Positions 1,132 to 60,835 of a DNA stretch of 64,000 nt are shown here, piece by piece (positions within the stretch are counted from its first letter, which is position 1; the number at the start of each line of letters is the position of its first letter). The notes under the pieces are model-generated. The model saw only the letters and a program-made list of their open reading frames with translations, had not been told where the DNA came from and did not search any database. The stretch spans positions 166,048 to 230,047 of the IMG/VR virus record IMGVR_UViG_3300042516_005475; one strand, given 5' to 3'. The translations under genes were made by a program, and so were the position numbers.

Positions 1132-1665
1132 ATGAATAAACCAGAAGAAATTATTGTTGAATTGCCTGAATTTTACCGAACTACTAAGCTCGGTGATAAA
1201 CTGCTTGATATTATTCCATACGGGTGGCGTATGTATTACAAGTATCAAGACTTGCAGCATTGGATTATTAAGACTTATCAAAAGCTTCGCTATGGAGTTT
1301 CTGAAAGTGAGTGTTGGAATCTTAGCACAACAATCACCAGCTTTGTATTGCCTCGTCTCAAGCATTTTAAGAAGATGCAGAGATATGCTTATCCTCCTGA
1401 TATAACTCCAGAGCAATGGGAAGAGATCATTGATGAGTTGATCTGGACATTTGAGTTCATGAATAACGAAGGAGAGGTTCTCAATCCTTTCCCAGATGTA
1501 TGGAAGAATGAAGAAGAAGAGCTATGGGAATACTGCCAGAGGAAGAAAACTCCTGAAGAGAAAGAGGCTATTAATAAATGGTATGCTAAGCAACTTGAAC
1601 TTAATGAGCGTAAGAGAAGGGGTCTCGAGTTATTTGCTAAGTACTATGATGCTCTTTGGGACTAA
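1132..1665 (+). CDS. hypothetical phage protein
   Basis: ATG 1132 follows thyX stop by 1 nt; PPDITPEQWEEIIDELIWTFE...RGLELFAKYYDALWD. Confidence 0.7.
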   Translation: MNKPEEIIVELPEFYRTTKLGDKLLDIIPYGWRMYYKYQDLQHWIIKTYQKLRYGVSESECWNLSTTITSFVLPRLKHFKKMQRYAYPPDITPEQWEEIIDELIWTFEFMNNEGEVLNPFPDVWKNEEEELWEYCQRKKTPEEKEAINKWYAKQLELNERKRRGLELFAKYYDALWD

Positions 1666-1673
1666 ATAACTTT

Positions 1674-1883
1674 ATGAATCAAAACATTATTAGAGAGAAC
1701 AATGATTTCTCAGTAGATTATAAGGATACCTGTGTAGCCTGTAATGGTCCTTCAGAGGAGAACAAGAGTACCAATGTTACTTTACGCAAATTTTATGTAG
1801 AAGGTTCTGGGCAATTGTGTAGGAAGTGTTATTTTAATGTTTTTCCAGAGAAACCCTATTCAAATTATTCGAATCTTGGATAA
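1674..1883 (+). CDS. small CxxC...CxxC zinc-finger protein
   Basis: CVACNG...YVEGSGQLCRKCY; TAAATA at 1663-1668 lies 5 nt before ATG 1674. Confidence 0.6.
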   Translation: MNQNIIRENNDFSVDYKDTCVACNGPSEENKSTNVTLRKFYVEGSGQLCRKCYFNVFPEKPYSNYSNLG

Positions 1884-1891
1884 ATACCTAT

Positions 1892-3988
1892 GTGAAGTTT
1901 CAAGATTATCTCATTGAGTCCTGGAAAGATTATAAAGTAAGTAACAGCCCCAAAGTACTTTTGTACGACTTTTACTTGCTTAGTTATCTTTCCTCTCTTA
2001 TTTTAGATCCAGGTACCAGAAAAGATGTTGGTTTAACAGGTGTTGGTTATTCTGGTAAATTCTTTGGAAGAGAAGGTAAAGAGCTCGATGAAGATATTCA
2101 AAACGCACAGAGAAAGCTATTACCATTCTTAGGTAACAAGCTATCTCAGGCTTTATTTTTAGCCGTTTGCGCAGAGCTACGCCATGTATTAGATAGAAAT
2201 CAACAATGGAGTGAGTTTAAGCATACAAAGAACAAAACATTTAGAAACTATATAAGAAACTTAGAGTTCATGAATAATAAAGAACTCAAAGATTTCCAAT
2301 CTAAAAGAAACATAGAAAATCCAAGATTACAGGTTCAAAGCCAAGGTTATAAAACATCTTACCAGGCTGCAAAGAAGTCTATCAAAGAAACAGGTGGCAA
2401 TGTAATTGACTTTGCCAGAATGGCTGCAGACGCCTTTGAAGATTTAAACTGGTCAGCATCATACGGAGGAGATAAGTGGGCTGAAATTGCTAAAGGTTAT
2501 GTAGATTTGCGCCTGGCTCTCAACAATTATAATCCTGAGGCTCCCAGCCCTTCTTCTGAGTCAGCAGAAAGGTTAATTGCTGCTATTGATCATGCATTTG
2601 ATTTAGAGCACAATACTGGTACAGTATTAAACAAAGTAAAGTACTTTGATGTTAAGGGATATGATTGGATTAAGACTGCCTTGGATGATAAGAGAGATGC
2701 TAACATGTATGACATAGCCAAGAAGGCTAGTAGCGACATGAGAAAGCTAGGTCAAGAAGTGTTAAAGGTGGCTGGTATGCAGGATAAGCAGATGAAAAAA
2801 GTACCTGCAGAGGCTGGTATTCCAACAAAGAAAATAAAGCTGGCTGGGTTTACCTCGAAGAAATATGAAGGTGAACATATTAAAGATCTCAGCAGTCTTC
2901 CTATAGGTAGTCTCATAACAGATGATTATAGCGAGTATGTAGCTAAAGTTTTAAATATAAAAAATGCAGAGAAAAAGGTTACGGTTAAATTTATAGCTAT
3001 AAAAAATAAAAATGATGAAAAATGGTTAGGAAAAACTCATAGATATAGTTTTAACTATATTAAAGAAAAATTACACATAGTTAAAAAACAAGATGAGGCT
3101 AATCTCTTAAAAGATTACTTTGTAGATCCTAGTTATAAACCGGAAGTTACTAGCACTTCATCTGCCATAAAAATTGGTGACACAGTAAAAGTTAAGAATA
3201 ATAACATGGAGGGTACTGTAGAATTAATTAATAATGAGGGAGATAATGAAGCACCCTTAGTTCAAATTAAAGTAATTAAAGCTATTCACCCTGAGCTTGT
3301 AGGTATTAAAACCTGGTACCCAGCAGACCATCTTGAGAAGATATCTCCATCAAAGGTAGTTAAGCTACAAGGTTTTGGTAGTAAAAAGCCAGCAAAAAAT
3401 GAGGCATTATTATTTTCAACAGAAATTGAAAGCCCATATATGTTAACTATAGGTTCAATTCTAATTAATATCCATAGTTCTGATCTATATATTGTTCAAA
3501 TGGTTAATGGGCCTGGAAATTATATAAAGATAAAATTAGTTGCATCGAACGACGCTTTGGAGTTTCCTAATTATACTGAACCTGAATTATACAATGGTGC
3601 TACAATTGCGAGAGATTTTAGATTAATAAAAAACAAAGATAAGGAAAGAGCCTTTGCTTCATATGAGTTTATAAAATTATCTTCTGCGAGTAGAGAAGCA
3701 TCTAAGGCTGCCAAGGCAGATGAGCCAGCCCCTAGAGAAAGAGATGAAAATTTAAAAGTTGGTTTTTACTTTGTAATTAATAATGAAACAAACATTGTTC
3801 AAATAACAGCTCTTCCAAGAGGTTATGTTGAATATAAAATAGTAGCAGCTACTAAAAAATATAAAGAGTTGGAAGGTGTTTCTAGCGGTATGCCTAAAGA
3901 TATGTTCATAGATTCAATTGACTTTGCTATTAATCCTAAATCAACTGAATTTAATTACTATATTAGACAATTCAAAAATAAACGTTGA
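1892..3988 (+). CDS. large late protein, putative internal head protein; conserved N-terminal domain plus KOW/SH3-like repeats (paralog of 8767-12267)
   Basis: 698 aa; MKFQDYLIE leader; LYDFY, WSASYGGDKW, IDHAFDLEHNTG shared with 8767; IKIGDTVKVK-type repeats; TAAATA 1881-1886. Confidence 0.65.
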   Translation: MKFQDYLIESWKDYKVSNSPKVLLYDFYLLSYLSSLILDPGTRKDVGLTGVGYSGKFFGREGKELDEDIQNAQRKLLPFLGNKLSQALFLAVCAELRHVLDRNQQWSEFKHTKNKTFRNYIRNLEFMNNKELKDFQSKRNIENPRLQVQSQGYKTSYQAAKKSIKETGGNVIDFARMAADAFEDLNWSASYGGDKWAEIAKGYVDLRLALNNYNPEAPSPSSESAERLIAAIDHAFDLEHNTGTVLNKVKYFDVKGYDWIKTALDDKRDANMYDIAKKASSDMRKLGQEVLKVAGMQDKQMKKVPAEAGIPTKKIKLAGFTSKKYEGEHIKDLSSLPIGSLITDDYSEYVAKVLNIKNAEKKVTVKFIAIKNKNDEKWLGKTHRYSFNYIKEKLHIVKKQDEANLLKDYFVDPSYKPEVTSTSSAIKIGDTVKVKNNNMEGTVELINNEGDNEAPLVQIKVIKAIHPELVGIKTWYPADHLEKISPSKVVKLQGFGSKKPAKNEALLFSTEIESPYMLTIGSILINIHSSDLYIVQMVNGPGNYIKIKLVASNDALEFPNYTEPELYNGATIARDFRLIKNKDKERAFASYEFIKLSSASREASKAAKADEPAPRERDENLKVGFYFVINNETNIVQITALPRGYVEYKIVAATKKYKELEGVSSGMPKDMFIDSIDFAINPKSTEFNYYIRQFKNKR

Positions 3989-4018
3989 TTCTGCATAGAA
4001 CCCCGTTATAATACAGAA

Positions 4019-4411
4019 ATGAGCTATTATCTCTTTTTGGACGATGAACGCTTCCCTCAAGATGTCACTTGGGTGAAGCTCCCACCCCACAACTGGACCA
4101 TTGTTCGCAACTATGCTGACTTTGTGCGAACCATTGAGAACAAAGGTTTGCCTGTGGAAATTGCCTTTGATCATGACTTGGGACACGAGCATTATCAGGC
4201 CTATCATGCCGCTGCTAAGCCTGGACATGGAGTCATTGATTACAGCAGCTTCAAGGAGAAGACTGGTCTCGACTGCGCCAAGTGGCTCATTGAACATTGT
4301 AACGAGAAGAATTTGCCGTTCCCCAAGTATTATGTTCACTCCATGAACCCCATTGGCAAGCAGAATATCATCAACGCTGTCAATTCCTTCAAAAGATATT
4401 TGCAAAAGTAG
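4019..4411 (+). CDS. cyclic-phosphate-processing receiver (cREC-type REC) domain protein
   Basis: LFLDDER.P, IAFDHDLG, TGLDCAKWL, VHSMNPIG motifs of this stand-alone receiver family. Confidence 0.8.
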   Translation: MSYYLFLDDERFPQDVTWVKLPPHNWTIVRNYADFVRTIENKGLPVEIAFDHDLGHEHYQAYHAAAKPGHGVIDYSSFKEKTGLDCAKWLIEHCNEKNLPFPKYYVHSMNPIGKQNIINAVNSFKRYLQK

Positions 4412-6264: not shown

Positions 6265-6286
6265 CTAAAAGGGCATAAATATCTTT

Positions 6287-7684
6287 ATGCCTGTTAACAG
6301 TAATGTAACAACTCCTAATTACCAAACTTTAGAGTATCAAAAGTTTGTCCAAATATATAATGATACTAGATTCCCTCCAATAACAAGTGTAAGATCTGAC
6401 TATTATAGCGGTACACAGATTGAGATATATGATAAGTATGCTGTATTAACTTTTGATATTGGGCAAAATGCAGCTCTAGGACCAGCTAATACGTTGCCGT
6501 TTGGAGATAATGCTGCTAGTGATGCCTTTGGTAGACTGAGAGTTTCTCTCCCATCTACCTTATTTAACTCTAAACAAAATAATGATAGTAATTCTTTACT
6601 CTATAGCACAGCAACTGTAAATACAGGTAGTTGGTATTTTGATAACAATAATGCCTGTACAGTCTTATCTGTTTCAGCAACAGGAGATGTTGCTATAAAG
6701 CAGTCAAAAAAGTATATGAATTATCAGCCTGGCAAATCCCAGCTGATATTCGAAACCTTTGTAATGCCTAACACAGCAGGCATAGTTAACAGAGTTGGTT
6801 TATTTGATAGCTCAACAACTTCTCCATATAGCAATAATATTGAGGGTTATTATTTTCAATGTAATAATGGAGTAAATTCTTTCCATATTGCTAATGTTGG
6901 TGACGAGCCAAGCCAAAGCGCTTTACAATCTGAATGGAACATAGACAAGCTTAACGGTACAGGTTTATCTGGTATAACATTAGATGTTACAAAAACCCAG
7001 ATTTTAGTAATAGATTACGAGTGGTTAGGGGTAGGGAGAGTTAGAATGGGGTTCTGTATTAATGGTATTATATTTTATTGTCATCAATTCGTTCATGCAA
7101 ATGAAGTCTCTCTTCCTTATCTCCAAGATCCAAACAAACCTATTAGATATGAAATTAGAAGCACAGGTGGAATAGGTTCATTAAAACAAATATGCGCTAG
7201 TGTTATGAGTGAAGGTGGAAGTGTTGATAACGCTATCCCGTTATCTATTGATACTGGGTTTGACAGTATTGGTAATATTTCAAGCAATACATTATGGCCA
7301 GCTATAACTGTTAGACTAAAAGATTCTTTTAAGAGTGTAGATATACAATTAAAAGACTTTGCTGCAATGGCTTTCTCAACTACTAATACTCTTGTAAGAG
7401 TAGTATCAAATGGTGTTATTTCTAATTCAGCAGCCTTTGTTGATATGAGCTCTGGGGCCTTGGAATATAGTATAGGCACTACTTCTACTACTCTTACTGG
7501 AGGTGTTATATTATTCAGCTCTTTTTTTAATAAGGCCAGCAATACTATTAGTCAATTAGGAGAGTCTTTATATAGTTTAGGTAGCAACATAAACGGCACC
7601 AAAGATACATTATCATTAGTATTAGTTCCATGTGGAGGAAATGAAAAGTATTTTGCTGCAATGAACTTCAAACAGTACCTATAA
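6287..7684 (+). CDS. putative virion structural protein (beta-rich)
   Basis: 465 aa S/T/N-rich; DAFGRLRVS, YQPGKSQL, DYEWLGVGRVRMGF; TAAATA 6276-6281. Confidence 0.6.
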   Translation: MPVNSNVTTPNYQTLEYQKFVQIYNDTRFPPITSVRSDYYSGTQIEIYDKYAVLTFDIGQNAALGPANTLPFGDNAASDAFGRLRVSLPSTLFNSKQNNDSNSLLYSTATVNTGSWYFDNNNACTVLSVSATGDVAIKQSKKYMNYQPGKSQLIFETFVMPNTAGIVNRVGLFDSSTTSPYSNNIEGYYFQCNNGVNSFHIANVGDEPSQSALQSEWNIDKLNGTGLSGITLDVTKTQILVIDYEWLGVGRVRMGFCINGIIFYCHQFVHANEVSLPYLQDPNKPIRYEIRSTGGIGSLKQICASVMSEGGSVDNAIPLSIDTGFDSIGNISSNTLWPAITVRLKDSFKSVDIQLKDFAAMAFSTTNTLVRVVSNGVISNSAAFVDMSSGALEYSIGTTSTTLTGGVILFSSFFNKASNTISQLGESLYSLGSNINGTKDTLSLVLVPCGGNEKYFAAMNFKQYL

Positions 7685-8746: not shown

Positions 8747-8766
8747 GGAGAGTTAATAAATATTCA

Positions 8767-11700
8767 GTGATGACACTGAGCAATTTCTTAACCGAGGCAG
8801 CAGTAAATTACAAGATTGGTAGTGGTAACCCAGAGAAGATGCTCTATGACTTTTATGTCTTGAGCTTCATCTCTACCATTAACTTAACACCTGAGAAGGC
8901 CAAGACTGGAACCTTTGGAGATCTTGGATTCCAGGGTGGGTTTCTCGGTAAATCTGATAGAGTCAAGGAGGACATTGAGTACGCTCAAGATGTCCTCCTT
9001 CCTGTGTTAAAAGAGAAGCTAGTAAAAGGTTTGTTTGTATCTATCTGTGCTGAAATCAGACACATAAAAGATAGACCACAAAGCTATAAAGACACACCAT
9101 TAGCAACATCCAAGGTATTCAGAGACTACTATCGCAATTATACTTTAATAGATAAAAGTTTACCAAAAGAGTTTGAGATAAAGAGATTAAGAGAGCCTAA
9201 AAGCGCTATTCCAAAGTCTGAAGCTTACAAGAGATCCTATCAGGCGGCAACAAAGGCTATTAAAGACACAAATTCTACTCCATATGAGTTTGTTCAGATG
9301 TGTGAATATGCCTTTAAGAACATGTCATGGGCTGCTAGTTACGGTGGTAAGAACTGGGCTGCTATTTGCGCTGGGTACAGATTGTTAGTAGATTCTAAGT
9401 CAAAGGATCAGGTATCTGTAGCTATTGACCATGCATATGACCTTGAGCATAACACAGGTGCGGCTCTTAACAAGGTAAAGGATTTCTACATTACTGATAA
9501 AAATGGTAGAGAAGACTTTGATTGGATGGGCAAAGCATTGGATCTCAAGCGCGACGCTAAGTCCATGAACAAGCTCATTGACAAGTGTAGCGGTGATATG
9601 AAGAGATTAGCCTTGCAGGCTATGGCCTTATCTCCAATTGACTACATGAAGAAGAAGACTCCAGCTCCAGAGACTGTGATGCAGCAAACAGCATCTAAAG
9701 TAGGTGGAGAGTACTTAAATGCCTTTAATGAAGGAGCACCTAAGAAGTATAGAACAAAAGAAACTAAAAAGGAAGAGAAGGCTGATTTAAGTGAAGTAAA
9801 GGTAGTTCCAGGCCCTAAGCATGGATTAACAGCAGTAACCAAATATCAAGAAGATAATGTTTATTATGATGAGTATTTAAAAACCTATGTGTATGTTGTT
9901 AAGAAAGTGCCAGAAACAAAATCTGGAATAATTGTAAAATTAGCTGCTATAACAAAAGAAACCCCTAAAGAGATTTTAAAGAAGCAAATTGATCTACACA
10001 ACAAAGGAAATAATACTTATGTTAGTATCGACATGAACTTATTAAATTTAAGTCCAACAGATTTAGCTAACTTTTTTAATGAGGAAATACCAGTAACATC
10101 AAACGTAACAAAATTTAAATTAGCTCCTGCGCCTAAAGACTCTTCACATGCTCCTTACATTTTTCAAAAAAACAAATATTATTATGATAGTTTTTTAAAT
10201 GTTTATGTAGAGTTTATTAAACCAGACCCTGATTCTAAACTTGGAATAATTGTTTCTTTAGTAGCAGTTACTCCAAATTCTGCTATTTCTCTACTTCAAA
10301 ATAAAATTAAGGCCTATAATAAAGAACATGCTTATTTGAATACCTATGTCGCTGCGGAAAACGACCTTATGGGAGTTAGCCCAAAGGATGAAGAATCCTT
10401 AAAAGCTGCTGTATCTGGTAAGACTCCAATTAAATCACCAGAAGATCAATACGAAAGAGAGGAAAAGCAGTCAAAAGAGTATATTAGCAAGCTAGTACCT
10501 AATGCTCCTATGCCTATCACTGGTAGTAAGGTTAATAAGTTTAGTGATGATAAAATTTATTATGACAGCAAGACAAAGGCTTATGTAAAATATAAACATA
10601 AGAGTGGCTGGACAGATCCTAAAATAATGGAATTGTATGCAACAACATATTTTTCGGATACAGCTTTATTAAAAAGAAAAATTGAACTGTTTAAAAAGGA
10701 ATTTGGTCAAAATAAACAATATGTAGCTGCAATAAAAGATATTATTGAGATTGATGAATCTGATACAAACAAAGTAAAACAAGTAGTAGATGGAGAGAAG
10801 TCTGAGGTTAAGAAGCCTAATTTAGATGTATATTTCGCAAAGTATAAATTTGGTGATAAGGTCTTTTTAGATGTTAAAAAATCTGTATCTGGTCAAGTAA
10901 TAGAGAACTTTTTTGAAGATAATGATGAGTATTACAAAATTAAAGTAATTGATAATGCATCATATACTGGCGCTAGTTCTCCTTATGGAATAGGTAAAAT
11001 CTTTACAAAAACTGCAAAGTATATAGATGACTTAAACCCAAAATACAAAGTAACTGACAGAGTAATTTTAATACAATCCGGTAGTGAAGGTATTATTGTT
11101 CAGACCCCATTCAAGCAAGACGCTACATCTAATTATCTTATTAAGATTACAAAAGCAGGAGAGTCAAATGCCTTTAAAAAAGGAGAAGAAATTGTAGTTA
11201 ATACCAGCCGTATCGCCCCTTTGAAGAGGGAGAATGCTAGCGCAAGAACTAATGCTATTAAGAAGCAGAGTGCTCCAGGTAATATACCGTCAGAGGCCTG
11301 GGATAAAATGAGCGAAAAAGTAAAGAACATCTTTGCTCCATATAAGAAAAACAAAAACACTTCTTATGTTTATTATACTGAGAAAGGAGGCAGACAATTA
11401 GGTTTGTATGGTGTAATTGAAAAATTTTACTACAGTCAGGTTGGCGGTACAGAATTACTTACAGTAGAATTTAGATATTTTGTTTCTGCTGCATCTCAAG
11501 CTTCTTTTACAACAATATCTGAGAATAATTTTAATAAACTACAAGATTACAAATCTGCTTTAGAAAGTGTAAATGATTCACCTCTTTACAATGCTCCTTC
11601 TCAAAACTTAGATTCTGCATTAATGCTAAAAGACTATCAAACTGATATTAATGGAGAGGTATTTTATCATATACCAGCTCAGCAATATGTAAAGGTTAAG

Positions 11701-12267: not shown

Positions 12268-12301
12268 TTGATTCTTAAAAATCATTGGTTATAATAATTA
12301 C

Positions 12302-12649
12302 ATGACTGTTGAACAATTAGCGAGAGATTATAAGCAGCTAATGGCTGTGACTAATTCTCTCGCTTCTGCCTTGCAGAGCATTGATATCTTTCAGAAGTAT
12401 AACGAAGAATCTACATTAGCTACTCGTAGAATCTGGAGCAATTATAACTGTTGGCTATACAAAGGTGAGGCTATTGCCAATGTTAATGCAGAACAGATAG
12501 AACTTTCAGTTGCAAAGTTTGAAGATTTAATGCATACTGTTAACAGCAACCAAGAGCTTAAAATGCTCTTGCAAGGCATTGAAATTGAAAAGATAAACGA
12601 ACCTGATATTCAAGATGAAGCACCAAATAGATACGATGACATCTATTAA
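12302..12649 (+). CDS. hypothetical protein
   Basis: 115 aa ORF 6 nt after a TATAAT box. Confidence 0.6.
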   Translation: MTVEQLARDYKQLMAVTNSLASALQSIDIFQKYNEESTLATRRIWSNYNCWLYKGEAIANVNAEQIELSVAKFEDLMHTVNSNQELKMLLQGIEIEKINEPDIQDEAPNRYDDIY

Positions 12650-12812: not shown

Positions 12813-13069
12813 AGAATGCCTTGTTTCTTGACACATCTTGGTACGGAATAGATTTGTGTGCCAAAAGAATTCTGAATTTCTCTGGACTTTCCTCTGCAGG
12901 TCCTTCATAATCTCTTTAATGAATGAGATGCTTGATGCTCAGGATAGCCTCTACGATGTTGCTTTCGTCTCTGCAGAAGAGTATTATGAGGAAATGCAGC
13001 CGTTAGATTTAAACTAATTTTAAACTACGTTATTTGTATTTTATTTGTATTTAGATTAAATATAACTGT

Positions 13070-13372
13070 ATGTTTTGCCGCATTTTAAGCCTTTTTAGAT
13101 CGAAGCAGATATTGTTTCTGAATGTTGATTCTTTTAAAGAAATTAGTAAGCAGAACATACAAATCTTAGAAAACCAAAAAACAATTATGGCAGCTATCGA
13201 TAACCTCAATGAAGCACTACAACGCCTAGCAAAGGCAACTGACACCGCAGTGACTGTTCTCAATACTCCTCACCCAACCGAGGAAGCTATTCAGGCTGCT
13301 GCTGACCTAGTTCAAGCTCAGGCTCAACGTCTCGAGTCTGCAAGCGATAATGATCCTAGCACAATCGCCTAA
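13070..13372 (+). CDS. hypothetical helical protein
   Basis: Ala/Gln-rich C-terminal half; start may be 13187. Confidence 0.5.
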   Translation: MFCRILSLFRSKQILFLNVDSFKEISKQNIQILENQKTIMAAIDNLNEALQRLAKATDTAVTVLNTPHPTEEAIQAAADLVQAQAQRLESASDNDPSTIA

Positions 13373-15322: not shown

Positions 15323-15350
15323 GGCTACAGAGAAATCTGTAGCCTTTTAT
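15323..15350 (+). terminator. intrinsic terminator
   Basis: GGCTACAG-AGAAAT-CTGTAGCC then TTTTATTTT. Confidence 0.85.
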
Positions 15351-15372
15351 TTTTTACATATAAATATCTAGT

Positions 15373-15960
15373 ATGATTGATGATGTTTTAACAAGAAGCT
15401 CTTATAAAAACATTTGCCTACAGCAAAGAGAAGAGGTTAAAAACGTGTTCCCTGTATTGTTAAATAACATACTACCAAATAGAATTATTGAAGTAGGTAC
15501 TGGACATGGTGGTTTAACATTGTTCTTAAGGGATAATTTACCATCAACCTCAGATGTTTATTCTTTTGATATTGTTGAAAGTGTTTATCATAAAGATTTA
15601 AGAGATAATAAAATTAATATTTTTAATGGAAATATTTTTGAAGAAAAAACAGATTGGAATGAATTTATTTTAAAACAAGAATGGGAGCATTTATTTAACG
15701 TTAGCCCCAAAATTGTTATATGTGATGGAGGTTTCAAGCGAGGAGAGTTTAATGGTTTAGCAAAATATTTAAATATTGGGGATATTATAATGCTGCATGA
15801 TTATAGTACTGATAGAGAGTCTTTTGAAAAGTTAAACGTTTGGAATTGGTTAGAGTGTCAATATTCAGAAATTAAAAAAAGCTGTGAAACTTATAACCTA
15901 ATACCTTACATGCACGAAGAATTTCTAAATGTAGCGTGGGGATGTTTTCAAAAAAAATAA
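15373..15960 (+). CDS. class I SAM-dependent methyltransferase (CmcI-like)
   Basis: IIEVGTGHGG, YSFDI, ICDGG, GDIIMLHD; exact TATAAATA at 15359-15366. Confidence 0.75.
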   Translation: MIDDVLTRSSYKNICLQQREEVKNVFPVLLNNILPNRIIEVGTGHGGLTLFLRDNLPSTSDVYSFDIVESVYHKDLRDNKINIFNGNIFEEKTDWNEFILKQEWEHLFNVSPKIVICDGGFKRGEFNGLAKYLNIGDIIMLHDYSTDRESFEKLNVWNWLECQYSEIKKSCETYNLIPYMHEEFLNVAWGCFQKK

Positions 15961-19947: not shown

Positions 19948-20025
19948 AATAATACTGATACTTATATTAAGCCTATATTTTTCAAGCTAAGTTGATTATT
20001 TAAAATAAAGGACTATAATATTCCT

Positions 20026-20865: not shown

Positions 20866-20930
20866 AGAAAGGCTTGCCGTTCCTGGCAGGAACCTGTATA
20901 CTTTTTGTAGAAAAATTAATAAATAATTGT

Positions 20931-21200
20931 ATGCCTTACAATAACGATTTCAACCGTATTTCTAAGAGCTATACTTCTCTTAAGGAGAACGAGGCTGCAA
21001 TGAAGATGCTGTTTGAGAATTTTGATATTACTGAAGAAGAATTTAAGAATGCTCCTCTTATCTCTACAATTGAAGAAATGAACACGCTGCTAGAAAAGCG
21101 AGGCGATATTTCTTGTAGTGTTTCTATTAACGAGAGCAATGGTAAAGATACATCAGTTGTTACTTTGAAGTACTTGGCACAAGGAGAAGATATTGTATGA
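20931..21200 (+). CDS. hypothetical late protein
   Basis: Start moved to ATG 20931 (TAAATA 20920-20925, 5 nt upstream). Confidence 0.55.
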   Translation: MPYNNDFNRISKSYTSLKENEAAMKMLFENFDITEEEFKNAPLISTIEEMNTLLEKRGDISCSVSINESNGKDTSVVTLKYLAQGEDIV

Positions 21201-40965: not shown

Positions 40966-42260
40966 ATGTCTCTTAAACCATTAAAGACTAAAGAGCGATT
41001 AGATGCCTTGAAGAACAATCCAAAGGCATTATTAGCTTTTTGCAAAGATGTATTAAAGGCTCCATGGCCAGAGGCTGAACCATACATCTTAAAAGATACT
41101 ATGGTTGCTATGCATTATGCCTATCATGTTAAACAGAAGCTATGGCCTGAGTTAGAAAATATACTAGATGGTACTAGATATATGCCAATGTATAACTGGA
41201 ACATGAGATATTTTACCTATTAATATGCCTCTTAAATCAATCAAACTAAAAGATAGATTACAAAAGAAAAAGAAAGATCCTTTTGAAATCATTAATTTTT
41301 GCAGATACACTATAATGGGTCGCTGGCCAGAAGTTGAACCTTTTTTACTAAAACATAAAGATCCTTTTTGGGCATTGTTATATGCCAGAGACATCATCAA
41401 AGGGCGATGGCCAGAAGCAGAACCTCTTATCATGAAAGAGGCATACATGGCATACAAGTACGCTAGAGATGTAATCAAAGGACCTTGGCCTGAAGCCGAG
41501 AAACATATTAAACGAGATGCTGCTGCCTGGAGCGAATATACAAAAAAGGTACTAAACAACTCATAACATATGCCCCTAAAACCAATAAAGACTAAAGAGA
41601 GATTTGAAAATCTTATAAAAACTCCTAGAGGTGTTGTTACATATGCTGAGCATAAAAAAACGCCTGTACCTGATCTTGAGCATGTAATATTACTAGATGA
41701 CTTGGCAATCTATTGGTATGCCTATTATGTTTTACACCGCAGATGGCCAAAGGGAGAACAGATATTGTTGAGAGGAGCTTTTCCTATATGGGGACCAAAT
41801 GCCTATGTTCTAAGCAGATATGCAGAAAATATAATAAAAAATCGTTGGCCAGAGGCTGAACCATTTATTAAAAAAGATTCATCAGAATGGGAAAATTACT
41901 CAAACAACTTTAACATTCAAGACTAATATGCCCCTCAAACCAATAAAGACTAAAGAAAGATTAGAACAAGTAAAGAAAGATGCAGGATTAGCATATTATT
42001 TTGCTAAAGATGTAATCAAGGATCGTTGGCCAGAAGTTGAACCTATTATTATGCAGGATGCCTGGTGGGCATGGAAGTATGCTGTAGACGTTATTAGAGC
42101 ACCATGGCCAGAGGCTGAACATGTTATCTCTAAAAAATCTATGCCTGCTTATAATTATGCTGTATTGGTAATAAAAGATAAATGGCCACCTGGAGAAAAA
42201 GCTATTAATAAATTAGCCTACTCCAAAAAAGGATATAAACATTTTGTAGACAATTTATAA
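40966..42260 (+). CDS. four tandem WPEAEP helical-repeat genes (40966, 41225, 41570, 41928)
   Basis: M(P/S)LK(P/S)(I/L)K.K(E/D)R N-termini, RWPEAEP.I repeats, TAAATA 40954-40959. Confidence 0.75.
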
Positions 42261-47999: not shown

Positions 48000-49360
48000 G
48001 GTTTCTTATATTTATCTTTTACAGATGGTGTTTGTGGCGTCTTTTTAATATCTGCTGCTGGGTAGCCTGTTGGTTTAATTGTTGGTTGTTGAGAGGCTTC
48101 AACTAATTCAAACTGTGTTACACCACCTGGCATTCTAATAGCATATAGTTTCTTGCCTGATAATGGAACTCTTAATACTATTCTATTTCTCTTTTGGGCA
48201 ATGGCTGGTAATTGTAAAAAGTAATTGATCCACTTGGGCAATACCTTAGTATTATGAGCACCAAAGTATCTGAACTCAACTGTTTTATATTTGGCAAAGG
48301 CCTTTATGTTAGTACCAGCATAACGATCAGCGCTATTAATTGTTTCTAATAGTTCTTTATTAGACATCTGAAAAGGCTTTGGTTTATCCTGCCCACCATA
48401 TTTAACTCTTAAAATAACACTAATTAAGTTCTTTGAAACTTCATTTCTCAATTTTGCAAAGCCTAAATCTCTTCTTACCTTAGAGGCTTTTAAATCTGAC
48501 TCTACTTGCTCTTCATCTACTAGTGTTGTCATCGCCAGTAAATCGAAAGCATCAAAGTCTTTGGGTGTTCCAATGTGTATATGTAAACCAGTACCACTAT
48601 CGGTAATCTGATGGTCTACGAAGGCTGAGACCAAGTCTACTTGATCCATATTCTCTCTCTTTAAAATAGGAGATCTAATCTCTGTATTTGGACCGTCTGG
48701 ACCAATTGTCCACATATTAGGATCATATCGTTCATCTCTTTTGATGCTAATAGATTTGTTAAGAACATTAATAGCCTCATAGCAGCTAGCTTCTGGGTCT
48801 ACATCAACTTCAACTTCTACAAAGTCTTGCCAATTGTTATCAGCGATATACTCAAAGAATTCGTCTGTATTATCGTATTTGTCTCTTCTTTCCCAATAGG
48901 CGTAATTGTAATCAACATCACTTAATTTTTCTTGATATTCTTTTAATTCTCTTTCGTAGTCTTCTTCATTATTGTATGCGCTTAAATTTGGCTCAGCGTA
49001 CACATCAGTAAATGTGTCTTGAGACATTGGTCCATAGATATCATCATATCTGCTTATATCCCCTCTTCCGTATCTTTTCCATTGGATAGCAGCATCATTT
49101 CTTTTTTCTTCTAGCCAAGACAAATATTCAGCCTCTAAGTCTCTATTGCGACCACCTCTCCAAGAACCATTCAAGGCTTCTAATATATCGTCTTTCTCAA
49201 CTTCTTTGCTTGTTGTATTCGGTAGATATTCATACTCTACTCCGAATGTACCTTCTGGGATAGAGTGCTGCTCAGCCATTTTATTCTTGATCTGCTCTAT
49301 CTTTGCAAATGGAACTGGGCCCTCTTGTAGCAGGCTATTATATAAGTCTTTAAACTTCAC
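47996..49360 (-). CDS. amidoligase (COOH-NH2 ligase type 2)-like protein with acidic insertion
   Basis: TFGVEYEY, EIRSPIL, GTGLHIHIG, YKTVEFRYF; GTG start. Confidence 0.75.
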   Translation of the reverse strand: MKFKDLYNSLLQEGPVPFAKIEQIKNKMAEQHSIPEGTFGVEYEYLPNTTSKEVEKDDILEALNGSWRGGRNRDLEAEYLSWLEEKRNDAAIQWKRYGRGDISRYDDIYGPMSQDTFTDVYAEPNLSAYNNEEDYERELKEYQEKLSDVDYNYAYWERRDKYDNTDEFFEYIADNNWQDFVEVEVDVDPEASCYEAINVLNKSISIKRDERYDPNMWTIGPDGPNTEIRSPILKRENMDQVDLVSAFVDHQITDSGTGLHIHIGTPKDFDAFDLLAMTTLVDEEQVESDLKASKVRRDLGFAKLRNEVSKNLISVILRVKYGGQDKPKPFQMSNKELLETINSADRYAGTNIKAFAKYKTVEFRYFGAHNTKVLPKWINYFLQLPAIAQKRNRIVLRVPLSGKKLYAIRMPGGVTQFELVEASQQPTIKPTGYPAADIKKTPQTPSVKDKYKKP

Positions 49361-49409
49361 GTAATTATTTATTGCCTTTGGTAGATAGGCCCTTATAATA
49401 CCTCGTAGA

Positions 49410-50472: not shown

Positions 50473-51861
50473 TTAGGCTGTTGTTGAGTAACCAGCGGCA
50501 CCTAAACCAGATCTTGATGTCCCAATTTGGGTTGCAGAATCAGTAGCTATTACCCCTAAATTAGATACAAGATTTGTAATACTAACAGTTGAACCAGAGG
50601 AGTTTTCCCCATATCCAAAAATAGCCTTATCCCCACCATAGCTAGCAGCTGCAAGTCCATACCTAGCGGTACCTACCCCTGTTGTATTCGTTGCAATTAC
50701 CCCTGTATTAGATACTAGATTAGAAACACTAACAACTCCACCCTGTTGACTATTAGTAGTACCAAAACCAAAAATAGCCTTATCAGTGCTATACTTCGCA
50801 GCTCCAAGGTGAGTTCTCGCTGTTCCAACCCCTGTTGTATCAGTAGATACTACCCCTGTGTTAGATACTAGATTTGACATACTAACAGTTACAGAAAAGC
50901 TTGTAGACCCGTAAGCAAAAATAGCTTTATCAGTACCGTAACCTGTTCCTGCTAATCCGTATCTTGCTGTTCCGACCCCTGTTGTATCAGTAGATACTAC
51001 CCCAGTGTTTGATACGAGGTTAGTTATAGCAGTTGAAACAAAAGAGTCTGAAAAACCATAACCAAATATAGCTTTATCTGTACCATAACTACAAGCCCGA
51101 GTGTTTTCTCTACTTGTACCTACTCCTGTTACATCAGTAGATACTACACCAGTGTTTGAGACGAGGTTAGTCATAGATAAAATGGTATTATTATAACCGT
51201 ATCCAAATATTCCTTTATCTATACCATAAGTAGCTGCACCAAGTGTGCTTCTAGCAGTACCAACTCCCGTTACATTACTAGCAACGACTCCTGAGCTGGA
51301 TACTAAATTTTTTAAAGATAAGTAAGAACCACCACCATCACTTCCATAGGCAAATATCGCCTTTTGTGTAGGCGTACTAGCAGCGCCTGACGGTGTTGGA
51401 GTTGGTGTAACTGTAGAGGTTGGAGTAACAGTATTGGTTGGAGTAACTGTAATGGTTGGTGTAACTGTTGGTGTTACAGAGTTAGTCGGTGTAACTGTAA
51501 TGGTTGGTGTAACTGTTGGTGTTACAGAGTTAGTCGGTGTAACTGTGATGGTTGGTGTTACCGTAATTGTCGGAGTCGGAGTCGGTGTGATGTTATAACC
51601 AGAAACAATTGTATCACCAGCAGTAGTATTTATTGTAAAAGTATCCCCGTATATGAAAGCTGTATTTGAATAATTAAAACCTATTACCCCTTGATTTGGA
51701 CTTAAAGCGGTTGGGTCCCACCCGTCAATTAAACCATAAACTTTATTTGTATAAGCTGTAACACCACCTATAGTAACAAAAGAATTAAACGGTATAAATG
51801 TGTCTGTGTAGCAGAACACATAATTATATCTCGGATCTTTGAATACTAAATTCGCAGCCAT
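50473..51861 (-). CDS. putative fibre/adhesin: Thr-Pro linker plus Kelch-like beta-propeller
   Basis: TPTxTV repeats; ~6 repeats of DKAIFGYG...TNLVSNTGVV.TD.TGVGTAR; TATTTA 51867-51872. Confidence 0.7.
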   Translation of the reverse strand: MAANLVFKDPRYNYVFCYTDTFIPFNSFVTIGGVTAYTNKVYGLIDGWDPTALSPNQGVIGFNYSNTAFIYGDTFTINTTAGDTIVSGYNITPTPTPTITVTPTITVTPTNSVTPTVTPTITVTPTNSVTPTVTPTITVTPTNTVTPTSTVTPTPTPSGAASTPTQKAIFAYGSDGGGSYLSLKNLVSSSGVVASNVTGVGTARSTLGAATYGIDKGIFGYGYNNTILSMTNLVSNTGVVSTDVTGVGTSRENTRACSYGTDKAIFGYGFSDSFVSTAITNLVSNTGVVSTDTTGVGTARYGLAGTGYGTDKAIFAYGSTSFSVTVSMSNLVSNTGVVSTDTTGVGTARTHLGAAKYSTDKAIFGFGTTNSQQGGVVSVSNLVSNTGVIATNTTGVGTARYGLAAASYGGDKAIFGYGENSSGSTVSITNLVSNLGVIATDSATQIGTSRSGLGAAGYSTTA

Positions 51862-51888
51862 GTAGTTATTTATGGTTCGTAAGATTTA

Positions 51889-55806: not shown

Positions 55807-55807
55807 T

Positions 55808-58700: not shown

Positions 58701-58705
58701 ATTAA

Positions 58706-59962
58706 TTAACCTTGCTTCGGAACATTGCTATTTATAGCATTTTTAATGTTATTATAGGCTCTTGCTGTACCTGAAGTAACATCAGATACAACACTAGTTG
58801 CTGTATTGCTAGCAGCAGTAGCAACAGTACTTGTAGCTGTATTCACACTCTTATTAACAGTAGAAGGTAAGCCAGTTACAGAATTAAAAAAGTCTTTTGG
58901 TCCTTTAGCAGAGAAACCGCTAGCGGCTTGTACAACTTGATTCTCTAAATTGTTTACAACACTATCAGCAGCAACATTAGCTACCATATCCACAATAGGG
59001 CCACCCTTTGAAAGCTTCTTTTTATTTCTAGGGGATAAGGTATTGCATATCTTATTAATATTACTGTTTACTTCAGATGTTAACTTGGCTGTATAAAAAT
59101 TTGTATTCTTAACATCTTTTATTATATCTAAACTTCCAGTAACAGAAGTCGTTAAAGTCTTTCTTTTAAAATCTAACGTACCCAGCAATGATATTTCTGC
59201 ATTAAGATGCTTGTTAATTTTCTTATTAAGTTCAATAGCACCAGCAGCACCAGCACTTGTTATAACACCATTAACACTCACACCGTTAGGTATACTAGGT
59301 GTTATGCCTCCAAATGGAATGTTTGGAGAGGATATATTACTAAGTAAAGAACTTACAGCACTACGCAAACAATTTTTAATACCTAATCTTAAAGTACCTT
59401 TTATTTGAGTCAAACTACCTCTTACTGCAACAGTAGCAATACCAAATGAGGATTTTGCAAAATTACCTACAGCTCCAACAGCTCCTGTTACACCATTTTG
59501 AATGGTATTACCTGATACTAATCCAGACACAGTTGATTTGGCTCCACCAACTGTAGATACAACTGCCCCTTTTAAGGAAGCTGAACCACCTCTAACAAAC
59601 CCACCTATAGAGCCTCTCACACCATCACCTGAAACAGCTCCACCAATAGCCCCACCCAAAGTGTTGATTGCTACATTATTTAATTTTGTACGAGCAGCAC
59701 CTGAGGCAGCGGTTATGCCATCTTTAACCACCCCATTTGGATTCTTTACTAATGTCTTTACTGAACCAACTAAACCTTTTACATTGGCATTAATCGGAGG
59801 CAAAGGAGGAGCAGCTATGTTTATGCCAGTCTTAGCGTTGAGTTGATCGGTTAAAGACTGTGGAACAGATGTAACTCTTCCAATCTTCTCATCAACAGCG
59901 CTGATAGTCTTAGTAATATTCTTACTAAAATTTACAGGGTTAAACTTTTCTAATGCAGCCAT
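58706..59962 (-). CDS. G/A/S/T-rich structural protein (baseplate/tail module)
   Basis: 418 aa upstream of gp5-like gene; TATTTA 59969-59974. Confidence 0.5.
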   Translation of the reverse strand: MAALEKFNPVNFSKNITKTISAVDEKIGRVTSVPQSLTDQLNAKTGINIAAPPLPPINANVKGLVGSVKTLVKNPNGVVKDGITAASGAARTKLNNVAINTLGGAIGGAVSGDGVRGSIGGFVRGGSASLKGAVVSTVGGAKSTVSGLVSGNTIQNGVTGAVGAVGNFAKSSFGIATVAVRGSLTQIKGTLRLGIKNCLRSAVSSLLSNISSPNIPFGGITPSIPNGVSVNGVITSAGAAGAIELNKKINKHLNAEISLLGTLDFKRKTLTTSVTGSLDIIKDVKNTNFYTAKLTSEVNSNINKICNTLSPRNKKKLSKGGPIVDMVANVAADSVVNNLENQVVQAASGFSAKGPKDFFNSVTGLPSTVNKSVNTATSTVATAASNTATSVVSDVTSGTARAYNNIKNAINSNVPKQG

Positions 59963-60010
59963 TTAAATTATTTATTTGATTCTCTGAGTTTTGACACTAT
60001 AATGACAGAG

Positions 60011-60835
60011 ATGAATATTAAAGTATCTCATGAAGTACCTATTAAGCTCCTTGATTATTCTCGAAACTTTAACGATTATGACTACTGTCTGGTACACCTA
60101 CTGGATCAGAAACCGGAGTATAAGAAATATTATCAGTCTTGTAAACTCTATGACCGAGAATTGCTCTTGGATAATAGTATTTTCGAGCTTGGTAAGGCTT
60201 TCGATTCTGATAAGTTTGCTGAAAAGGTTGTAGAAATTGAACCTACTTATTACATTGTTCCTGACTCTCTGCAGAACTGTGAAGAGACTATTAGCAATTG
60301 GAAGAGTTTCGTTGCTAAGTATAATGACTTGCCTGGACTTAAAATTGGTGTCGTGCAAGGCAATACCTGGCGAGAACTTAAGTATTGCTATCAGTTCATG
60401 AACGAACATGCTGACTATATTGCAATCTCGTTCGATTATGCGTATTATTTGGTTACTGGAGAGTCTCCTACTAATAACAAGCTCGAGCTCTGGTGCTCTG
60501 GACGTCAACGACTCATTCAGCAACTTATGGATAGTGGCATCTGGAATACAAAGAAGCCTCATCACTTGCTTGGTTGTTCATTGGCTAAGGAGTTTAAGGC
60601 CTATATCGGTCAAACATCTATTCGCTCCGTCGATACTTCGAACCCAGTTGTTGCAGCCTTGCATAATCTCAAGTATAACGGTGATCTTGGATTGAAGACT
60701 AAACCGAGTACCAAGTTGGCTGATCTTATTGACTCTGAAGTTAGCAATGAGCAAATGGATCTTGTTGAGTACAATGTTGGAGCCTTTAAGGAGATCCTTG
60801 GGCGTCCCTCTGATAACTTCCTTCGAAAATTTTAA
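60011..60835 (+). CDS. TGT-fold protein, putative 7-deazaguanine-DNA transglycosylase (DpdA-like)
   Basis: LLLDNS.FELG, IVPD, GVVQG, HHLLGCS, SVDTS; context with QueF; ATG 60002 overlaps the -10 box so 60011 preferred. Confidence 0.65.
   Translation: MNIKVSHEVPIKLLDYSRNFNDYDYCLVHLLDQKPEYKKYYQSCKLYDRELLLDNSIFELGKAFDSDKFAEKVVEIEPTYYIVPDSLQNCEETISNWKSFVAKYNDLPGLKIGVVQGNTWRELKYCYQFMNEHADYIAISFDYAYYLVTGESPTNNKLELWCSGRQRLIQQLMDSGIWNTKKPHHLLGCSLAKEFKAYIGQTSIRSVDTSNPVVAALHNLKYNGDLGLKTKPSTKLADLIDSEVSNEQMDLVEYNVGAFKEILGRPSDNFLRKF

What the first reader, a model, noticed from the sequence alone, without database searches (positions are those of the whole stretch)
1663..60011. Late promoter sits a near-fixed 5-6 nt before the start codon: predicted leaderless mRNAs
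Seen: TAAATA-N5-start at 1674, 1892, 6287, 20931, 30469, 31789, 32878(-), 51861(-); N6 at 15373, 40966, 59962(-). TATAAT-N6/7-ATG at 4019, 12302, 20026, 28816, 60011. Shine-Dalgarno sequences are not evident; coupled genes use TAA-T-ATG. Known: T4 late transcription starts a few nt after TATAAATA. Inference: +1 falls at or next to the AUG, so much of the programme is leaderless, perhaps to bypass shut-off of canonical initiation.
Basis: partly seen in the sequence, partly recalled or inferred. Interest (0 to 1): 0.65.

Follow-up and report, generated by a model that had tools for sequence, protein, structure and literature searches.

The report
Promoters fused to start codons
In this uncultured 230-kb T4-like phage, both the late promoters and the host-type early promoters sit so close to the start codon that transcription should begin on the AUG itself, giving messages with no leader and no ribosome-binding site; a cultured SAR11 phage has the same late-promoter layout, so the prediction can be tested.

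Summary
All 16 listed sites check out. Genome-wide, TAAATA lies exactly 5 nt before 26 unbiased (longest-ORF) gene starts, against 0.19 expected.

The phage is a distant T4 relative with a gp55 late-sigma homolog. Published T4 numbering puts TATAAATA at -13 to -6, so an N5 spacer places +1 on the A of ATG.

The TATAAT sites are not late promoters. They are complete sigma-70-type promoters (TTGAWT-N16/17-TATAAT-N6/7-ATG; 6 in the window, 0.01 expected) with the same -10-to-ATG geometry. They precede DNA-metabolism genes, whereas TAAATA precedes portal, terminase and tail genes.

No Shine-Dalgarno signal exists anywhere. T4 run through the same pipeline shows one clearly. Other genes are tightly coupled (ATGA, TAATATG).

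Further support:
- 95% pyrimidine at -1, and no TTG starts.
- The motif is avoided away from gene starts.
- 15 of 26 divergent gene pairs have 17-60 bp spacers, most visibly filled by back-to-back promoters.
- A close relative conserves motif and spacing in 14 of 14 orthologs.

The late layout recurs in marine relatives and in cultured Pelagibacter phage HTVC008M. It is absent from T4, S-PM2 and PTm1.

No RNA data could be obtained, so leaderless transcription remains a strong prediction. The "bypass of shut-off" motive is not supported.

The parts
1663..1676 (+). Late-type promoter core TAAATA, N5, ATG (69-aa ORF)
1881..1894 (+). TAAATA, N5, GTG start of a 698-aa protein
6276..6289 (+). TAAATA, N5, ATG of a 465-aa virion structural protein (phrog_1645)
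8757..8772 (+). TAAATA, then GTG at N4 or ATG at N7, start of a 1166-aa protein
13057..13072 (+). TAAATA, N7, ATG (100 aa)
15323..15375 (+). Intrinsic terminator (stem 15323-15344, then a T run), followed by TAAATA (15361-15366), N6, ATG 15373. Only 28 nt separate the stem from the start codon
16557..16571 (+). TAAATA, N6, ATG of a 2OG-Fe(II) oxygenase-like protein (228 aa)
20920..20933 (+). TAAATA, N5, ATG (89 aa). A GGTTCCTG-type promoter-like element lies about 40 nt upstream
30458..30471 (+). TAAATA, N5, ATG (204 aa)
31778..31791 (+). TAAATA, N5, ATG (101 aa)
32876..32889 (-). TAAATA, N5, ATG (248 aa), minus strand
40954..40968 (+). TAAATA, N6, ATG (85 aa)
49358..49371 (-). TAAATA, N5, GTG of a 454-aa amidoligase-like protein
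51859..51872 (-). TAAATA, N5, ATG (462 aa)
59960..60013 (.). Divergent cassette. A 48-bp spacer between ATG 59962(-) and ATG 60011(+) holds a minus-strand TAAATA-N6 promoter directly abutting a plus-strand TTGATT-N16-TATAAT-N7 promoter
421..458 (+). Sigma-70-type promoter TTGAAT-N16-TAAAAT-N7-ATG of a thymidylate synthase-like gene
3985..4021 (+). TTGATT-N16-TATAAT-N6-ATG (130 aa)
12268..12304 (+). TTGATT-N16-TATAAT-N6-ATG (115 aa)
19992..20028 (+). TTGATT-N16-TATAAT-N6-ATG (69 aa)
20458..20494 (+). TTGATT-N16-TAAAAT-N6-ATG (63 aa)
28803..28818 (+). TATAAT-N7-ATG (173 aa). No clear -35 box
61743..61780 (+). TTGATA-N17-TAAAAT-N6-ATG of a thymidylate kinase-like gene

Best explanation
The window is the last 64 kb of a 230-kb uncultured phage that is a distant relative of T4. 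It uses at least two promoter classes that are physically fused to start codons.

Class 1 is a T4-type late promoter, (A)ATAAATA with no -35 box, presumably read by host RNA polymerase carrying the phage gp55 homolog. It lies 5 nt (less often 6-7 nt) before the ATG or GTG of virion and other late genes.

Class 2 is a canonical host sigma-70-type promoter, TTGAWT-N16/17-TATAAT. It lies 6-7 nt before the ATG of DNA and nucleotide-metabolism genes.

In both classes the -10 hexamer (ATAAAT or TATAAT) starts 12 nt before the start codon. The polymerase should therefore initiate on, or within a nucleotide or two of, the A or G of the start codon, giving leaderless mRNAs that ribosomes load directly at a 5'-terminal AUG or GUG.

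No gene has a Shine-Dalgarno sequence. Downstream genes in each unit are mostly joined by overlapping or adjacent stop and start codons (ATGA, TAATG, TAATATG), which fits termination-reinitiation.

Shown here: the motifs, their spacing and enrichment, the gp55 homolog, the split of gene functions between classes, the lack of SD, and conservation in relatives.
Inferred: the position of the transcription start, leaderless translation, and reinitiation.
For: Geometry:
- T4 late promoters are numbered -13 to -6 relative to the start site (PMC1524935; PMC2988020). A -10-like TANNNT about 12 nt before the start codon is the accepted bacterial signature of leaderless genes (PMC3160421; PMC12340547; PMC4007540, abstract as listed).

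Enrichment:
- TAAATA at offset 11 occurs 26 times against 0.19 expected, TATAAT at offset 12 occurs 9 against 0.21, and TTGATT at offset 34 occurs 6 against 0.18.
- The composite sigma-70 pattern is 6 against 0.01 in the window.
- Of 46 loose -35/-10 matches with a gene start within 80 nt, 20 lie at 6-7 nt.

Machinery:
- gp55 homolog: E 3.5e-9 against T4 gp55 and 7.8e-27 against phrog_234.
- T4-like DNA polymerase, UvsX, gp32 and gp44 are present.

Gene classes:
- The late motif precedes portal, large terminase, tail tube, sheath stabiliser and a virion protein.
- The sigma-70 type precedes UvsX, QueC, dUTPase, epimerase and thymidylate synthase/kinase-like genes.

Start-site signature in the 38 N5 genes:
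- Pyrimidine at -1 in 36 of 38.
- Start codons ATG 33, GTG 5, TTG 0.
- AT-rich spacer, as described for T4.

Selection:
- ATAAATA is the rarest of 21 same-composition words away from starts (65, typical values around 140), yet 54 of 119 copies lie within 25 nt of a called start.

No room for leaders:
- 15 of 26 divergent gene pairs have 17-60 bp spacers, most visibly filled by back-to-back promoters.
- A terminator stem ends 28 nt before ATG 15373.

Conservation:
- 14 of 14 orthologs in a close relative keep motif and spacing while flanks vary.

SD:
- No SD here, whereas T4 and S-PM2 show SD in the same pipeline.
- In HTVC008M the TAAATA-N5 genes sit beside SD-bearing genes, and 8 of 8 sites checked match independently annotated CDS starts.
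Against: - No transcript 5' end has been mapped. No RNA run was listed for this phage.
- The host and its RNA polymerase and ribosomes are unknown, so start-site choice and competence for leaderless translation are assumed.
- gp33 and the gp45 clamp were not detected by sequence.
- 5 of the 38 N5 genes start with GTG, which is poorly used on leaderless mRNAs in E. coli (my recollection), though it is accepted in Deinococcus (PMC4007540 abstract).
- The spacer is more conserved (A-T-T-A-T) than start-site geometry alone requires.
- Some late-type motifs lie 8-16 nt upstream, and read-through transcripts would also carry these genes internally.
Confidence: 0.7

Rival explanations
1. The motifs are promoters, but in this host the polymerase starts a few nucleotides away from the predicted +1. 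The mRNAs would then carry very short leaders (3-8 nt) rather than none, or would start inside the codon with translation beginning elsewhere.
For: - N6 and N7 variants exist beside N5.
- Some late motifs lie 8-16 nt upstream.
- The host polymerase is unknown.
- An A is frequent at -2 (20 of 38).
Against: - There is a sharp N5 mode, with pyrimidine at -1 in 36 of 38 genes and a purine-initial start codon in all 38.
- An independent promoter class has the same hexamer offset of 12.
- The ATG is itself part of the conserved pattern.
- Orthologous proteins align from residue 1.
Confidence: 0.13
2. TAAATA acts in the RNA, not the DNA. It would be an A/U-rich, Shine-Dalgarno-independent ribosome landing or enhancer element at a fixed distance from the AUG on longer transcripts, and its likeness to the T4 late promoter would be incidental or secondary.
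For: - The phage has no SD at all, so some other initiation signal is needed.
- The spacer is conserved.
- 15 motif-bearing genes lie inside tightly packed gene chains.
Against: - The motif equals the gp55 -10 consensus, and gp55 is encoded.
- It is restricted largely to late and structural genes.
- A second class with a full -35/-10 at the same offset cannot be an RNA signal.
- The motif is avoided elsewhere on both strands.
- Divergent spacers of 34-48 bp leave no other place for promoters.
- The Bacteroidota-infecting T4-like phage PTm1 also lacks SD but shows no such motif.
Confidence: 0.08
3. One reading: the leaderless layout is a late-phase device that lets phage messages escape a phage-imposed shut-off of canonical (SD-dependent) initiation.
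For: By my recollection, which I could not check here, Thermus phage phiYS40 combines leaderless middle and late transcripts with changes in host initiation factors. The genome also carries its own tmRNA, 24 tRNAs and an initiator-like tRNA-Met.
Against: - Early-type sigma-70 promoters are fused to start codons in the same way.
- No phage gene class uses SD, so nothing in the phage programme separates 'canonical' from 'leaderless' messages.
- No phage bS21 was detected.
Confidence: 0.1
4. Composition or gene-calling artefact in an AT-rich genome.
For: The genome is 36% G+C, and the gene caller used here was home-made.
Against: - Dinucleotide-preserving shuffles never reach the observed counts.
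- Starts were taken as the longest ORF, independent of the motif.
- T4, S-PM2 and the even more AT-rich PTm1 give no such spike in the same pipeline.
- RefSeq-annotated starts in HTVC008M coincide with the motif.
Confidence: 0.01

Closest known systems
T4 late promoters (TATAAATA read by gp55, with gp33 and the gp45 clamp)
   Same: Same -10-type core without a -35 box. A gp55-family sigma is encoded, and the motif sits in front of virion genes. A or T varies at -13, as in other T4 relatives.
   Different: In T4 the motif-to-ATG distance is scattered and the genes carry Shine-Dalgarno leaders (control). Here the motif is locked at N5/N6 and there is no SD. gp33 and gp45 were not detected by sequence.
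Leaderless genes with a -10 box adjacent to the ORF in Deinococcus-Thermus and Actinobacteria
   Same: TANNNT starts about 12 nt before the start codon, giving transcripts that begin at AUG or GUG (PMC3160421; PMC12340547; PMC4007540 abstract). A -35 box 17 bp upstream strengthens such promoters. The hexamer offset found here is the same.
   Different: Those are cellular genes read by the housekeeping sigma. Here the layout is in a phage genome and is applied to two sigma specificities, one of them phage-encoded. The remaining genes have no SD either.
Thermus phages phiYS40 and P23-45 (leaderless middle and late transcripts)
   Same: A lytic phage whose later temporal classes are reported to be largely leaderless. 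This is my recollection of Sevostyanova et al. 2007; the paper could not be opened.
   Different: Those phages are not T4-like, and host sigma-A reads extended -10 promoters. They infect a host phylum already known to favour leaderless mRNAs.
Pelagibacter phage HTVC008M (cultured T4-like pelagiphage)
   Same: TAAATA at offset 11 is the top upstream signal: 11 genes against 0.12 expected. It coincides with RefSeq CDS starts of head-closure, baseplate, tape-measure and DNA-end-protector genes.
   Different: Its other genes use a clear AGGAGA Shine-Dalgarno, and no fused sigma-70 class stood out. It is only distantly related: 2 of 56 late proteins hit at 1e-8. I found no paper in the library describing this layout.
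Lambda cI mRNA from PRM
   Same: The classical phage leaderless message, starting at the A of the AUG (textbook knowledge; cited in PMC12340547's reference list).
   Different: That is a single regulatory gene, not a genome-wide layout.

Membership tests
T4-type late transcription system | gp55-family late sigma factor encoded | tested here: met
   G000:C1:28740-29048 matches T4 gp55 at E 3.5e-9. The ORF L003:13581-14162 hits phrog_234 'late sigma transcription factor' at E 7.8e-27. It lies next to an ORF that looks like the T4 gp47 nuclease (my reading of its sequence, not tested), as in T4.
T4-type late transcription system | TATAAATA-like -10 element, no -35 box, upstream of late (virion) genes | tested here: met
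   The consensus is (A)ATAAATA, with nothing conserved upstream. It precedes portal, TerL, tail tube, sheath stabiliser and a virion protein.
T4-type late transcription system | gp33 co-activator | tested here: inconclusive
   A T4 gp33 query found nothing. The protein is short and fast-evolving, so a blank is uninformative.
T4-type late transcription system | gp45 sliding clamp as activator | tested here: inconclusive
   T4 gp45 and Pfam PF02916 found nothing. A gp44 clamp-loader homolog is present (E 2e-26), so a divergent clamp is expected.
T4-type late transcription system | Transcription starts 6 nt after the last A of the motif | not testable with these tools
   No RNA run was listed. 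The geometry is taken from PMC1524935 and PMC2988020.
Leaderless mRNA | -10 element beginning about 12 nt before the start codon | tested here: met
   ATAAAT at offset 12 in 23 genes and TATAAT at offset 12 in 9 genes, against about 0.2 expected. The criterion is from PMC3160421.
Leaderless mRNA | No Shine-Dalgarno or other room for a leader | tested here: met
   G is depleted and there is no SD k-mer enrichment. The T4 control is positive for SD. Divergent spacers are 17-60 bp in 15 of 26 pairs.
Leaderless mRNA | Mapped primary 5' end at or within a few nt of the start codon | not testable with these tools
   The look-up of sequencing runs listed no RNA holder, so read laying could not be used.
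Sigma-70-type (host) promoter | -35 TTGACA-like and -10 TATAAT-like hexamers 16-18 bp apart | tested here: met
   TTGAWT-N16/17-TAWAAT-N6/7-ATG occurs 6 times in the window against 0.01 expected. Two of them are among the best plus-strand matches of the independent promoter scan.

The most novel reading that the evidence does not exclude
A whole lineage of abundant aquatic T4-like phages, with freshwater and marine members and, separately, the cultured SAR11 phage HTVC008M, may make its late proteins from leaderless mRNAs that gp55-directed polymerase starts exactly on the AUG. This particular phage may go further and run an entirely Shine-Dalgarno-free programme: leaderless first genes from both host-sigma and phage-sigma promoters, with downstream genes translated by termination-reinitiation. 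That would be the first T4-family example, and the first case of a phage-encoded sigma factor dedicated to making leaderless messages.
Probability: 0.55. Interest if true: 0.72.

Novelty: new variant of a known kind. Interest (0 to 1): 0.6.

Why it matters
T4 late transcription and leaderless translation are both well studied, but separately. Finding them fused, with a phage sigma factor placing +1 on the AUG across a clade of environmentally abundant phages, would have three consequences.

- It would show how T4-like phages adapt gene expression to hosts that do not use Shine-Dalgarno pairing.
- It would give gene callers a strong start-codon signal for such genomes.
- It would provide a compact, self-contained expression cassette: 12-35 bp of promoter and no UTR.

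Because cultured Pelagibacter phage HTVC008M shows the same late-promoter layout, the prediction can be tested directly in an ecologically dominant host-phage pair.

Tried and rejected
- **RNA evidence.** The look-up of sequencing runs listed no RNA holder for window 1600-7590, so read laying was never usable.
- **Close cultured relatives.** None found. The megablast search was blank, and the best portal identity was 33%, to cyanophages.
- **Host identification failed.**
  - No whiB, so no actinophage marker.
  - No psbA.
  - No bS21.
  - The single genome-contig hit to the portal profile lies on a 9.6-kb contig of a MAG labelled 'archaeon ARS54'. I regard this as probable mis-binning, because a gp55 sigma and bacterial -35/-10 promoters do not fit an archaeal host.
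  - A Bacteroidota host is unlikely. The early promoters are canonical TTGAWT/TATAAT, and the Tenacibaculum phage PTm1 shows no fused motif.
- **gp45 and gp33.** Not detected by sequence.
- **Formyltransferase at 60839-61768.** I considered it as a possible Met-tRNA formyltransferase, which would bear on initiation. It matches PurN and sugar N-formyltransferases instead, so I dropped the idea.
- **TAA of the motif as the upstream stop codon.** I considered this as a reinitiation spacing rule and rejected it, because it applies to only a handful of junctions.
- **Literature.** Searches for 'leaderless' with T4-like late promoters, cyanophages or HTVC008M found nothing relevant. The phiYS40 paper could not be opened.
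Full report
**What the sequence is.** The window is bases 166,048-230,047 of a 230,047-bp IMG/VR virus record with 36% G+C.
- It has no close cultured relative. The megablast search was blank, and portal and virion proteins are about 33-35% identical to those of T4-like cyanophages.
- It carries T4-type core genes:
  - portal, large terminase, tail tube and sheath stabiliser;
  - family-B DNA polymerase, UvsX and gp32-like SSB;
  - a gp44 clamp-loader homolog and baseplate wedge proteins.
- Crucially, it encodes a homolog of the T4 late sigma factor gp55: E 3.5e-9 to T4 gp55 and E 7.8e-27 to phrog_234.
- The gp55 gene sits next to an ORF that looks like the T4 gp47 nuclease. That is my reading of its sequence and was not tested. 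The arrangement is the same as in T4.

**Checking the observation.**
- In the window, TAAATA-N5-ATG occurs 8 times against 2.13 +/- 1.40 in dinucleotide-preserving shuffles.
- Genome-wide, the spacing histogram from TAAATA to ATG has a sharp spike at N5 (41) and a shoulder at N6 (18), over a background of about 5. For ATAAATA, 33 of 119 copies are followed by ATG at exactly N5.
- To avoid circularity I called genes with a simple codon-usage model and took the longest ORF as the start. I then asked which hexamer at which offset is most over-represented upstream of the 270 starts:
  - TAAATA at offset 11 ranks first, 26 against 0.19 expected.
  - TATAAT at offset 12 occurs 9 times against 0.21.
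  - TTGATT at offset 34 occurs 6 times against 0.18.
- The same pipeline run on T4 returns the Shine-Dalgarno sequence (AGGAGA at offset 11) and no TAAATA spike. On cyanophage S-PM2 it returns a weaker SD and no spike.
- In this phage there is no SD signal at any offset, and G is depleted just upstream of starts.

**What the two motif groups are.**
- *TAAATA group.* Its extended consensus is (A)A-TAAATA-A-T-T-A-T-ATG, with nothing conserved further upstream. That is a T4-type late promoter.
  - It precedes portal, terminase, tail tube, sheath stabiliser and a virion structural protein.
They are complete sigma-70-type promoters, TTGAWT-N16/17-TATAAT-N6/7-ATG.
  - The pattern occurs six times in the window against 0.01 expected.
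  - Genome-wide, TTGA at offset 34 occurs 14 times against about 2 at neighbouring offsets.
  - 20 of 46 loose -35/-10 matches near a gene start fall at 6-7 nt.
  - These promoters precede UvsX, a QueC-like gene, dUTPase, a sugar epimerase and thymidylate synthase/kinase-like genes. Those are early or middle functions.

**Why this predicts leaderless mRNAs.**
- Two papers state that the T4 late consensus occupies -13 to -6 relative to the transcription start (PMC1524935; PMC2988020). The last A is therefore -6, five spacer bases fill -5 to -1, and the A of an ATG at N5 is +1.
- Read as a hexamer, ATAAAT starts 12 nt before the ATG, exactly as TATAAT does in the sigma-70 class. Two promoter classes with different sigma factors thus share one geometry with respect to the start codon.
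- A TANNNT box about 12 nt upstream of the start codon is the accepted computational signature of bacterial leaderless genes (PMC3160421). In Deinococcus it has been tied experimentally to transcripts that begin at AUG or GUG (PMC12340547; PMC4007540 abstract).

**Independent signatures that fit a start site on the start codon.**
1. In the 38 N5 genes, position -1 is a pyrimidine in 36 and the start codon is ATG (33) or GTG (5), never TTG. That is the classical pyrimidine(-1)/purine(+1) start dinucleotide. The spacer is AT-rich, as described for T4 (PMC2988020).
2. ATAAATA is the rarest of all 21 words of the same composition away from gene starts (65 copies; typical values about 140). Yet 54 of its 119 copies lie within 25 nt of a called start. 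This pattern is expected if stray promoters are selected against.
3. There is no room for leaders.
   - 15 of 26 divergent gene pairs are separated by only 17-60 bp, and most of these spacers are visibly filled by back-to-back promoters.
   - An example is window 59960-60013, where a minus-strand TAAATA-N6 promoter abuts the -35 box of a plus-strand TTGATT-N16-TATAAT-N7 promoter.
   - The independent terminator scan places a strong hairpin plus T run at 15323-15344, 28 nt before ATG 15373, and the late motif lies in between.
4. Conservation.
   - Before the portal gene, relatives with 77-97% protein identity keep TAAATA-N5-ATG although the upstream sequence and the spacer letters differ.
   - In a 68-kb contig of a close relative, 14 of 14 orthologs with a clear start keep both motif and spacing.
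   - In a relative with a 77%-identical portal, 4 of 8 do; in 50-56% relatives, about 5 of 12.
   - Orthologous proteins mostly align from residue 1, so these are the real start codons.

**How general it is.**
- The layout is a lineage trait rather than a quirk.
  - A complete 200,819-bp marine relative (portal 55% identical) shows TAAATA at offsets 11 and 12 as its top signals and also lacks SD.
  - Another relative of similar distance (127 kb, portal about 51% identical) has 15 TAAATA-N5-ATG sites against 2 for the reversed control pattern.
- Unexpectedly, the cultured Pelagibacter phage HTVC008M, only distantly related, does too.
  - TAAATA at offset 11 is its top signal, 11 genes against 0.12 expected, alongside a clear AGGAGA SD on other genes.
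  - All eight TAAATA-N5-ATG sites between 5.5 and 32.5 kb coincide with RefSeq-annotated CDS starts. These include the head-closure, baseplate tube cap, baseplate wedge, tape-measure and DNA-end-protector genes.
  - In a phage that does use SD, the motif-bearing genes therefore have no room for one, which is what a leaderless class looks like.
- T4, S-PM2, P-SSM2 and S-SRM01 show only background counts. The Tenacibaculum phage PTm1 has some raw excess over its reversed-pattern control (20 against 5), but no positional spike in the offset scan.
- I found no paper in the searchable library that describes this layout.

**Limits.**
- No RNA run could be listed, so no 5' end is mapped. The transcription start, leaderless translation and reinitiation are all inferences.
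- The host is unknown. There is no whiB, psbA or bS21. The only genome hit is a probably mis-binned contig in a MAG labelled as an archaeon.
- gp33 and the gp45 clamp were not detected by sequence.
- Not all genes are leaderless. By my crude calls:
  - 55 of 270 genes carry a late motif at N4-7;
  - 29 carry a -10-like hexamer at N6-7;
  - 90 are coupled to the upstream gene with a gap of 15 nt or less;
  - 96 are 'other'.
- The 'other' group includes late motifs 8-16 nt upstream. It also includes a third promoter-like class, cTTGaGGTTCCTG-N11/12-TATACT. That class should give A-rich, SD-less leaders of roughly 0-21 nt.

The suggestion that leaderless messages bypass a shut-off of canonical initiation is not supported. 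Early-type promoters share the geometry, and no phage gene class uses SD. The layout is the phage's general expression style and probably mirrors the translation habits of its host. I cannot exclude that the phage also manipulates initiation. It encodes a tmRNA, 24 tRNAs and an initiator-like tRNA-Met.

**Verdict.**
The core leaderless prediction is well founded, but the promoter classes were mislabelled and the proposed motive is unsupported.
- I rate it a new variant of known kinds: a T4 late promoter combined with -10-adjacent leaderless genes.
- Confidence is about 0.7 that most fused genes yield transcripts starting within 2 nt of the start codon.

Noticed in passing
window 5688-5745, 14340-14400, 14605-14660, 20872-20933, 21648-21705, 23393-23440, 24585-24630, 26113-26180, 27483-27540: A third promoter-like class has the consensus cTTGaGGTTCCTG, 11-12 nt, then TATACT, TATCAT or CATAAT. 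It is followed by an A-rich, SD-less stretch of 7-28 nt before the ATG, three times with the near-identical leader AGAAAATAAGAT. It lies upstream of small genes of unknown function. In three copies GGTTCCTG is half of an inverted repeat (GGTTCCTGGCAGGAACC). It may be a middle-type promoter with an activator box, loosely comparable to T4 MotA boxes.
   Followed up: partly
window 62468-63358 (QueF), 60839-61768 (formyltransferase), 61778-62464 (thymidylate kinase-like); genome 37601-38311 (QueC-like, L004:7601-8311): 7-deazaguanine (queuosine precursor) pathway genes are present: a two-domain QueF and a QueC-like gene. Near them sit a PurN or sugar-type formyltransferase and nucleotide kinases. 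This suggests the phage DNA carries a modified base.
   Followed up: partly
L011:7843-8222 (genome 142,843-143,222): A phage-encoded tmRNA (Rfam RF00023, 113 bits, E 2e-45) with an unusual 25-residue tag ending in AVA. A tRNA cluster follows directly.
   Followed up: partly
L008-L012 (genome about 108.6-165 kb); L012:5310-5382: There are 24 tRNA genes outside the window. One tRNA-Met (CAT) has a mismatched 1:72 pair (U opposite U) and strong overall likeness to bacterial initiator tRNA. A phage-borne initiator tRNA would bear on leaderless initiation.
   Followed up: partly
Pelagibacter phage HTVC008M, NC_020484 (L132-L139, L162): This cultured pelagiphage has TAAATA exactly 5 nt before at least 11 gene starts, mostly virion genes, with the extended consensus TAAATAGTAWYATG. 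Its other genes use AGGAGA. I found no published description of this.
   Followed up: yes
genome 131800/131835, 49427/49447, 72400/72449, 26767/26814, 70200/70248, 130511/130572; window 59962/60011: Compact divergent promoter cassettes. Two start codons 19-60 bp apart have back-to-back late/late or late/sigma-70 promoters. At 49427/49447 a near-palindromic TATAAATATTTAT serves both strands.
   Followed up: yes
window 13379-13410: A strong terminator hairpin (9 pairs, 6 of them G-C) has a T run that leads directly into ATG 13408, leaving no room for any promoter. That gene must depend on read-through or on some other mechanism.
   Followed up: no
L128 (NYZO01000119.1, 9.6-kb contig): The only hit to the portal profile among 185,579 species genomes lies in a MAG labelled 'archaeon isolate ARS54' (53% identity). 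This is probably a phage contig mis-binned by composition or coverage, not a host clue.
   Followed up: no
genome 94381-104982 and 116443-120564 (outside the window): A 3533-aa ORF is preceded by TAAATA-N6. A 1373-aa ORF appears to contain collagen-like Gly-X-Y repeats, judged from its repeated GGNNNNCCNGG-type DNA units.
   Followed up: no
window 7730-8746 and 23435-24574: A T4 RnlA-like RNA ligase (phrog_968, E 3e-71) and an ATP-dependent DNA ligase are both present in the window.
   Followed up: no
window 30142-30155: One further TAAATA-N5-ATG does not coincide with a called gene start. It is either a chance match or the start of an uncalled small ORF just upstream of the 30171-30452 ORF.
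   Followed up: no
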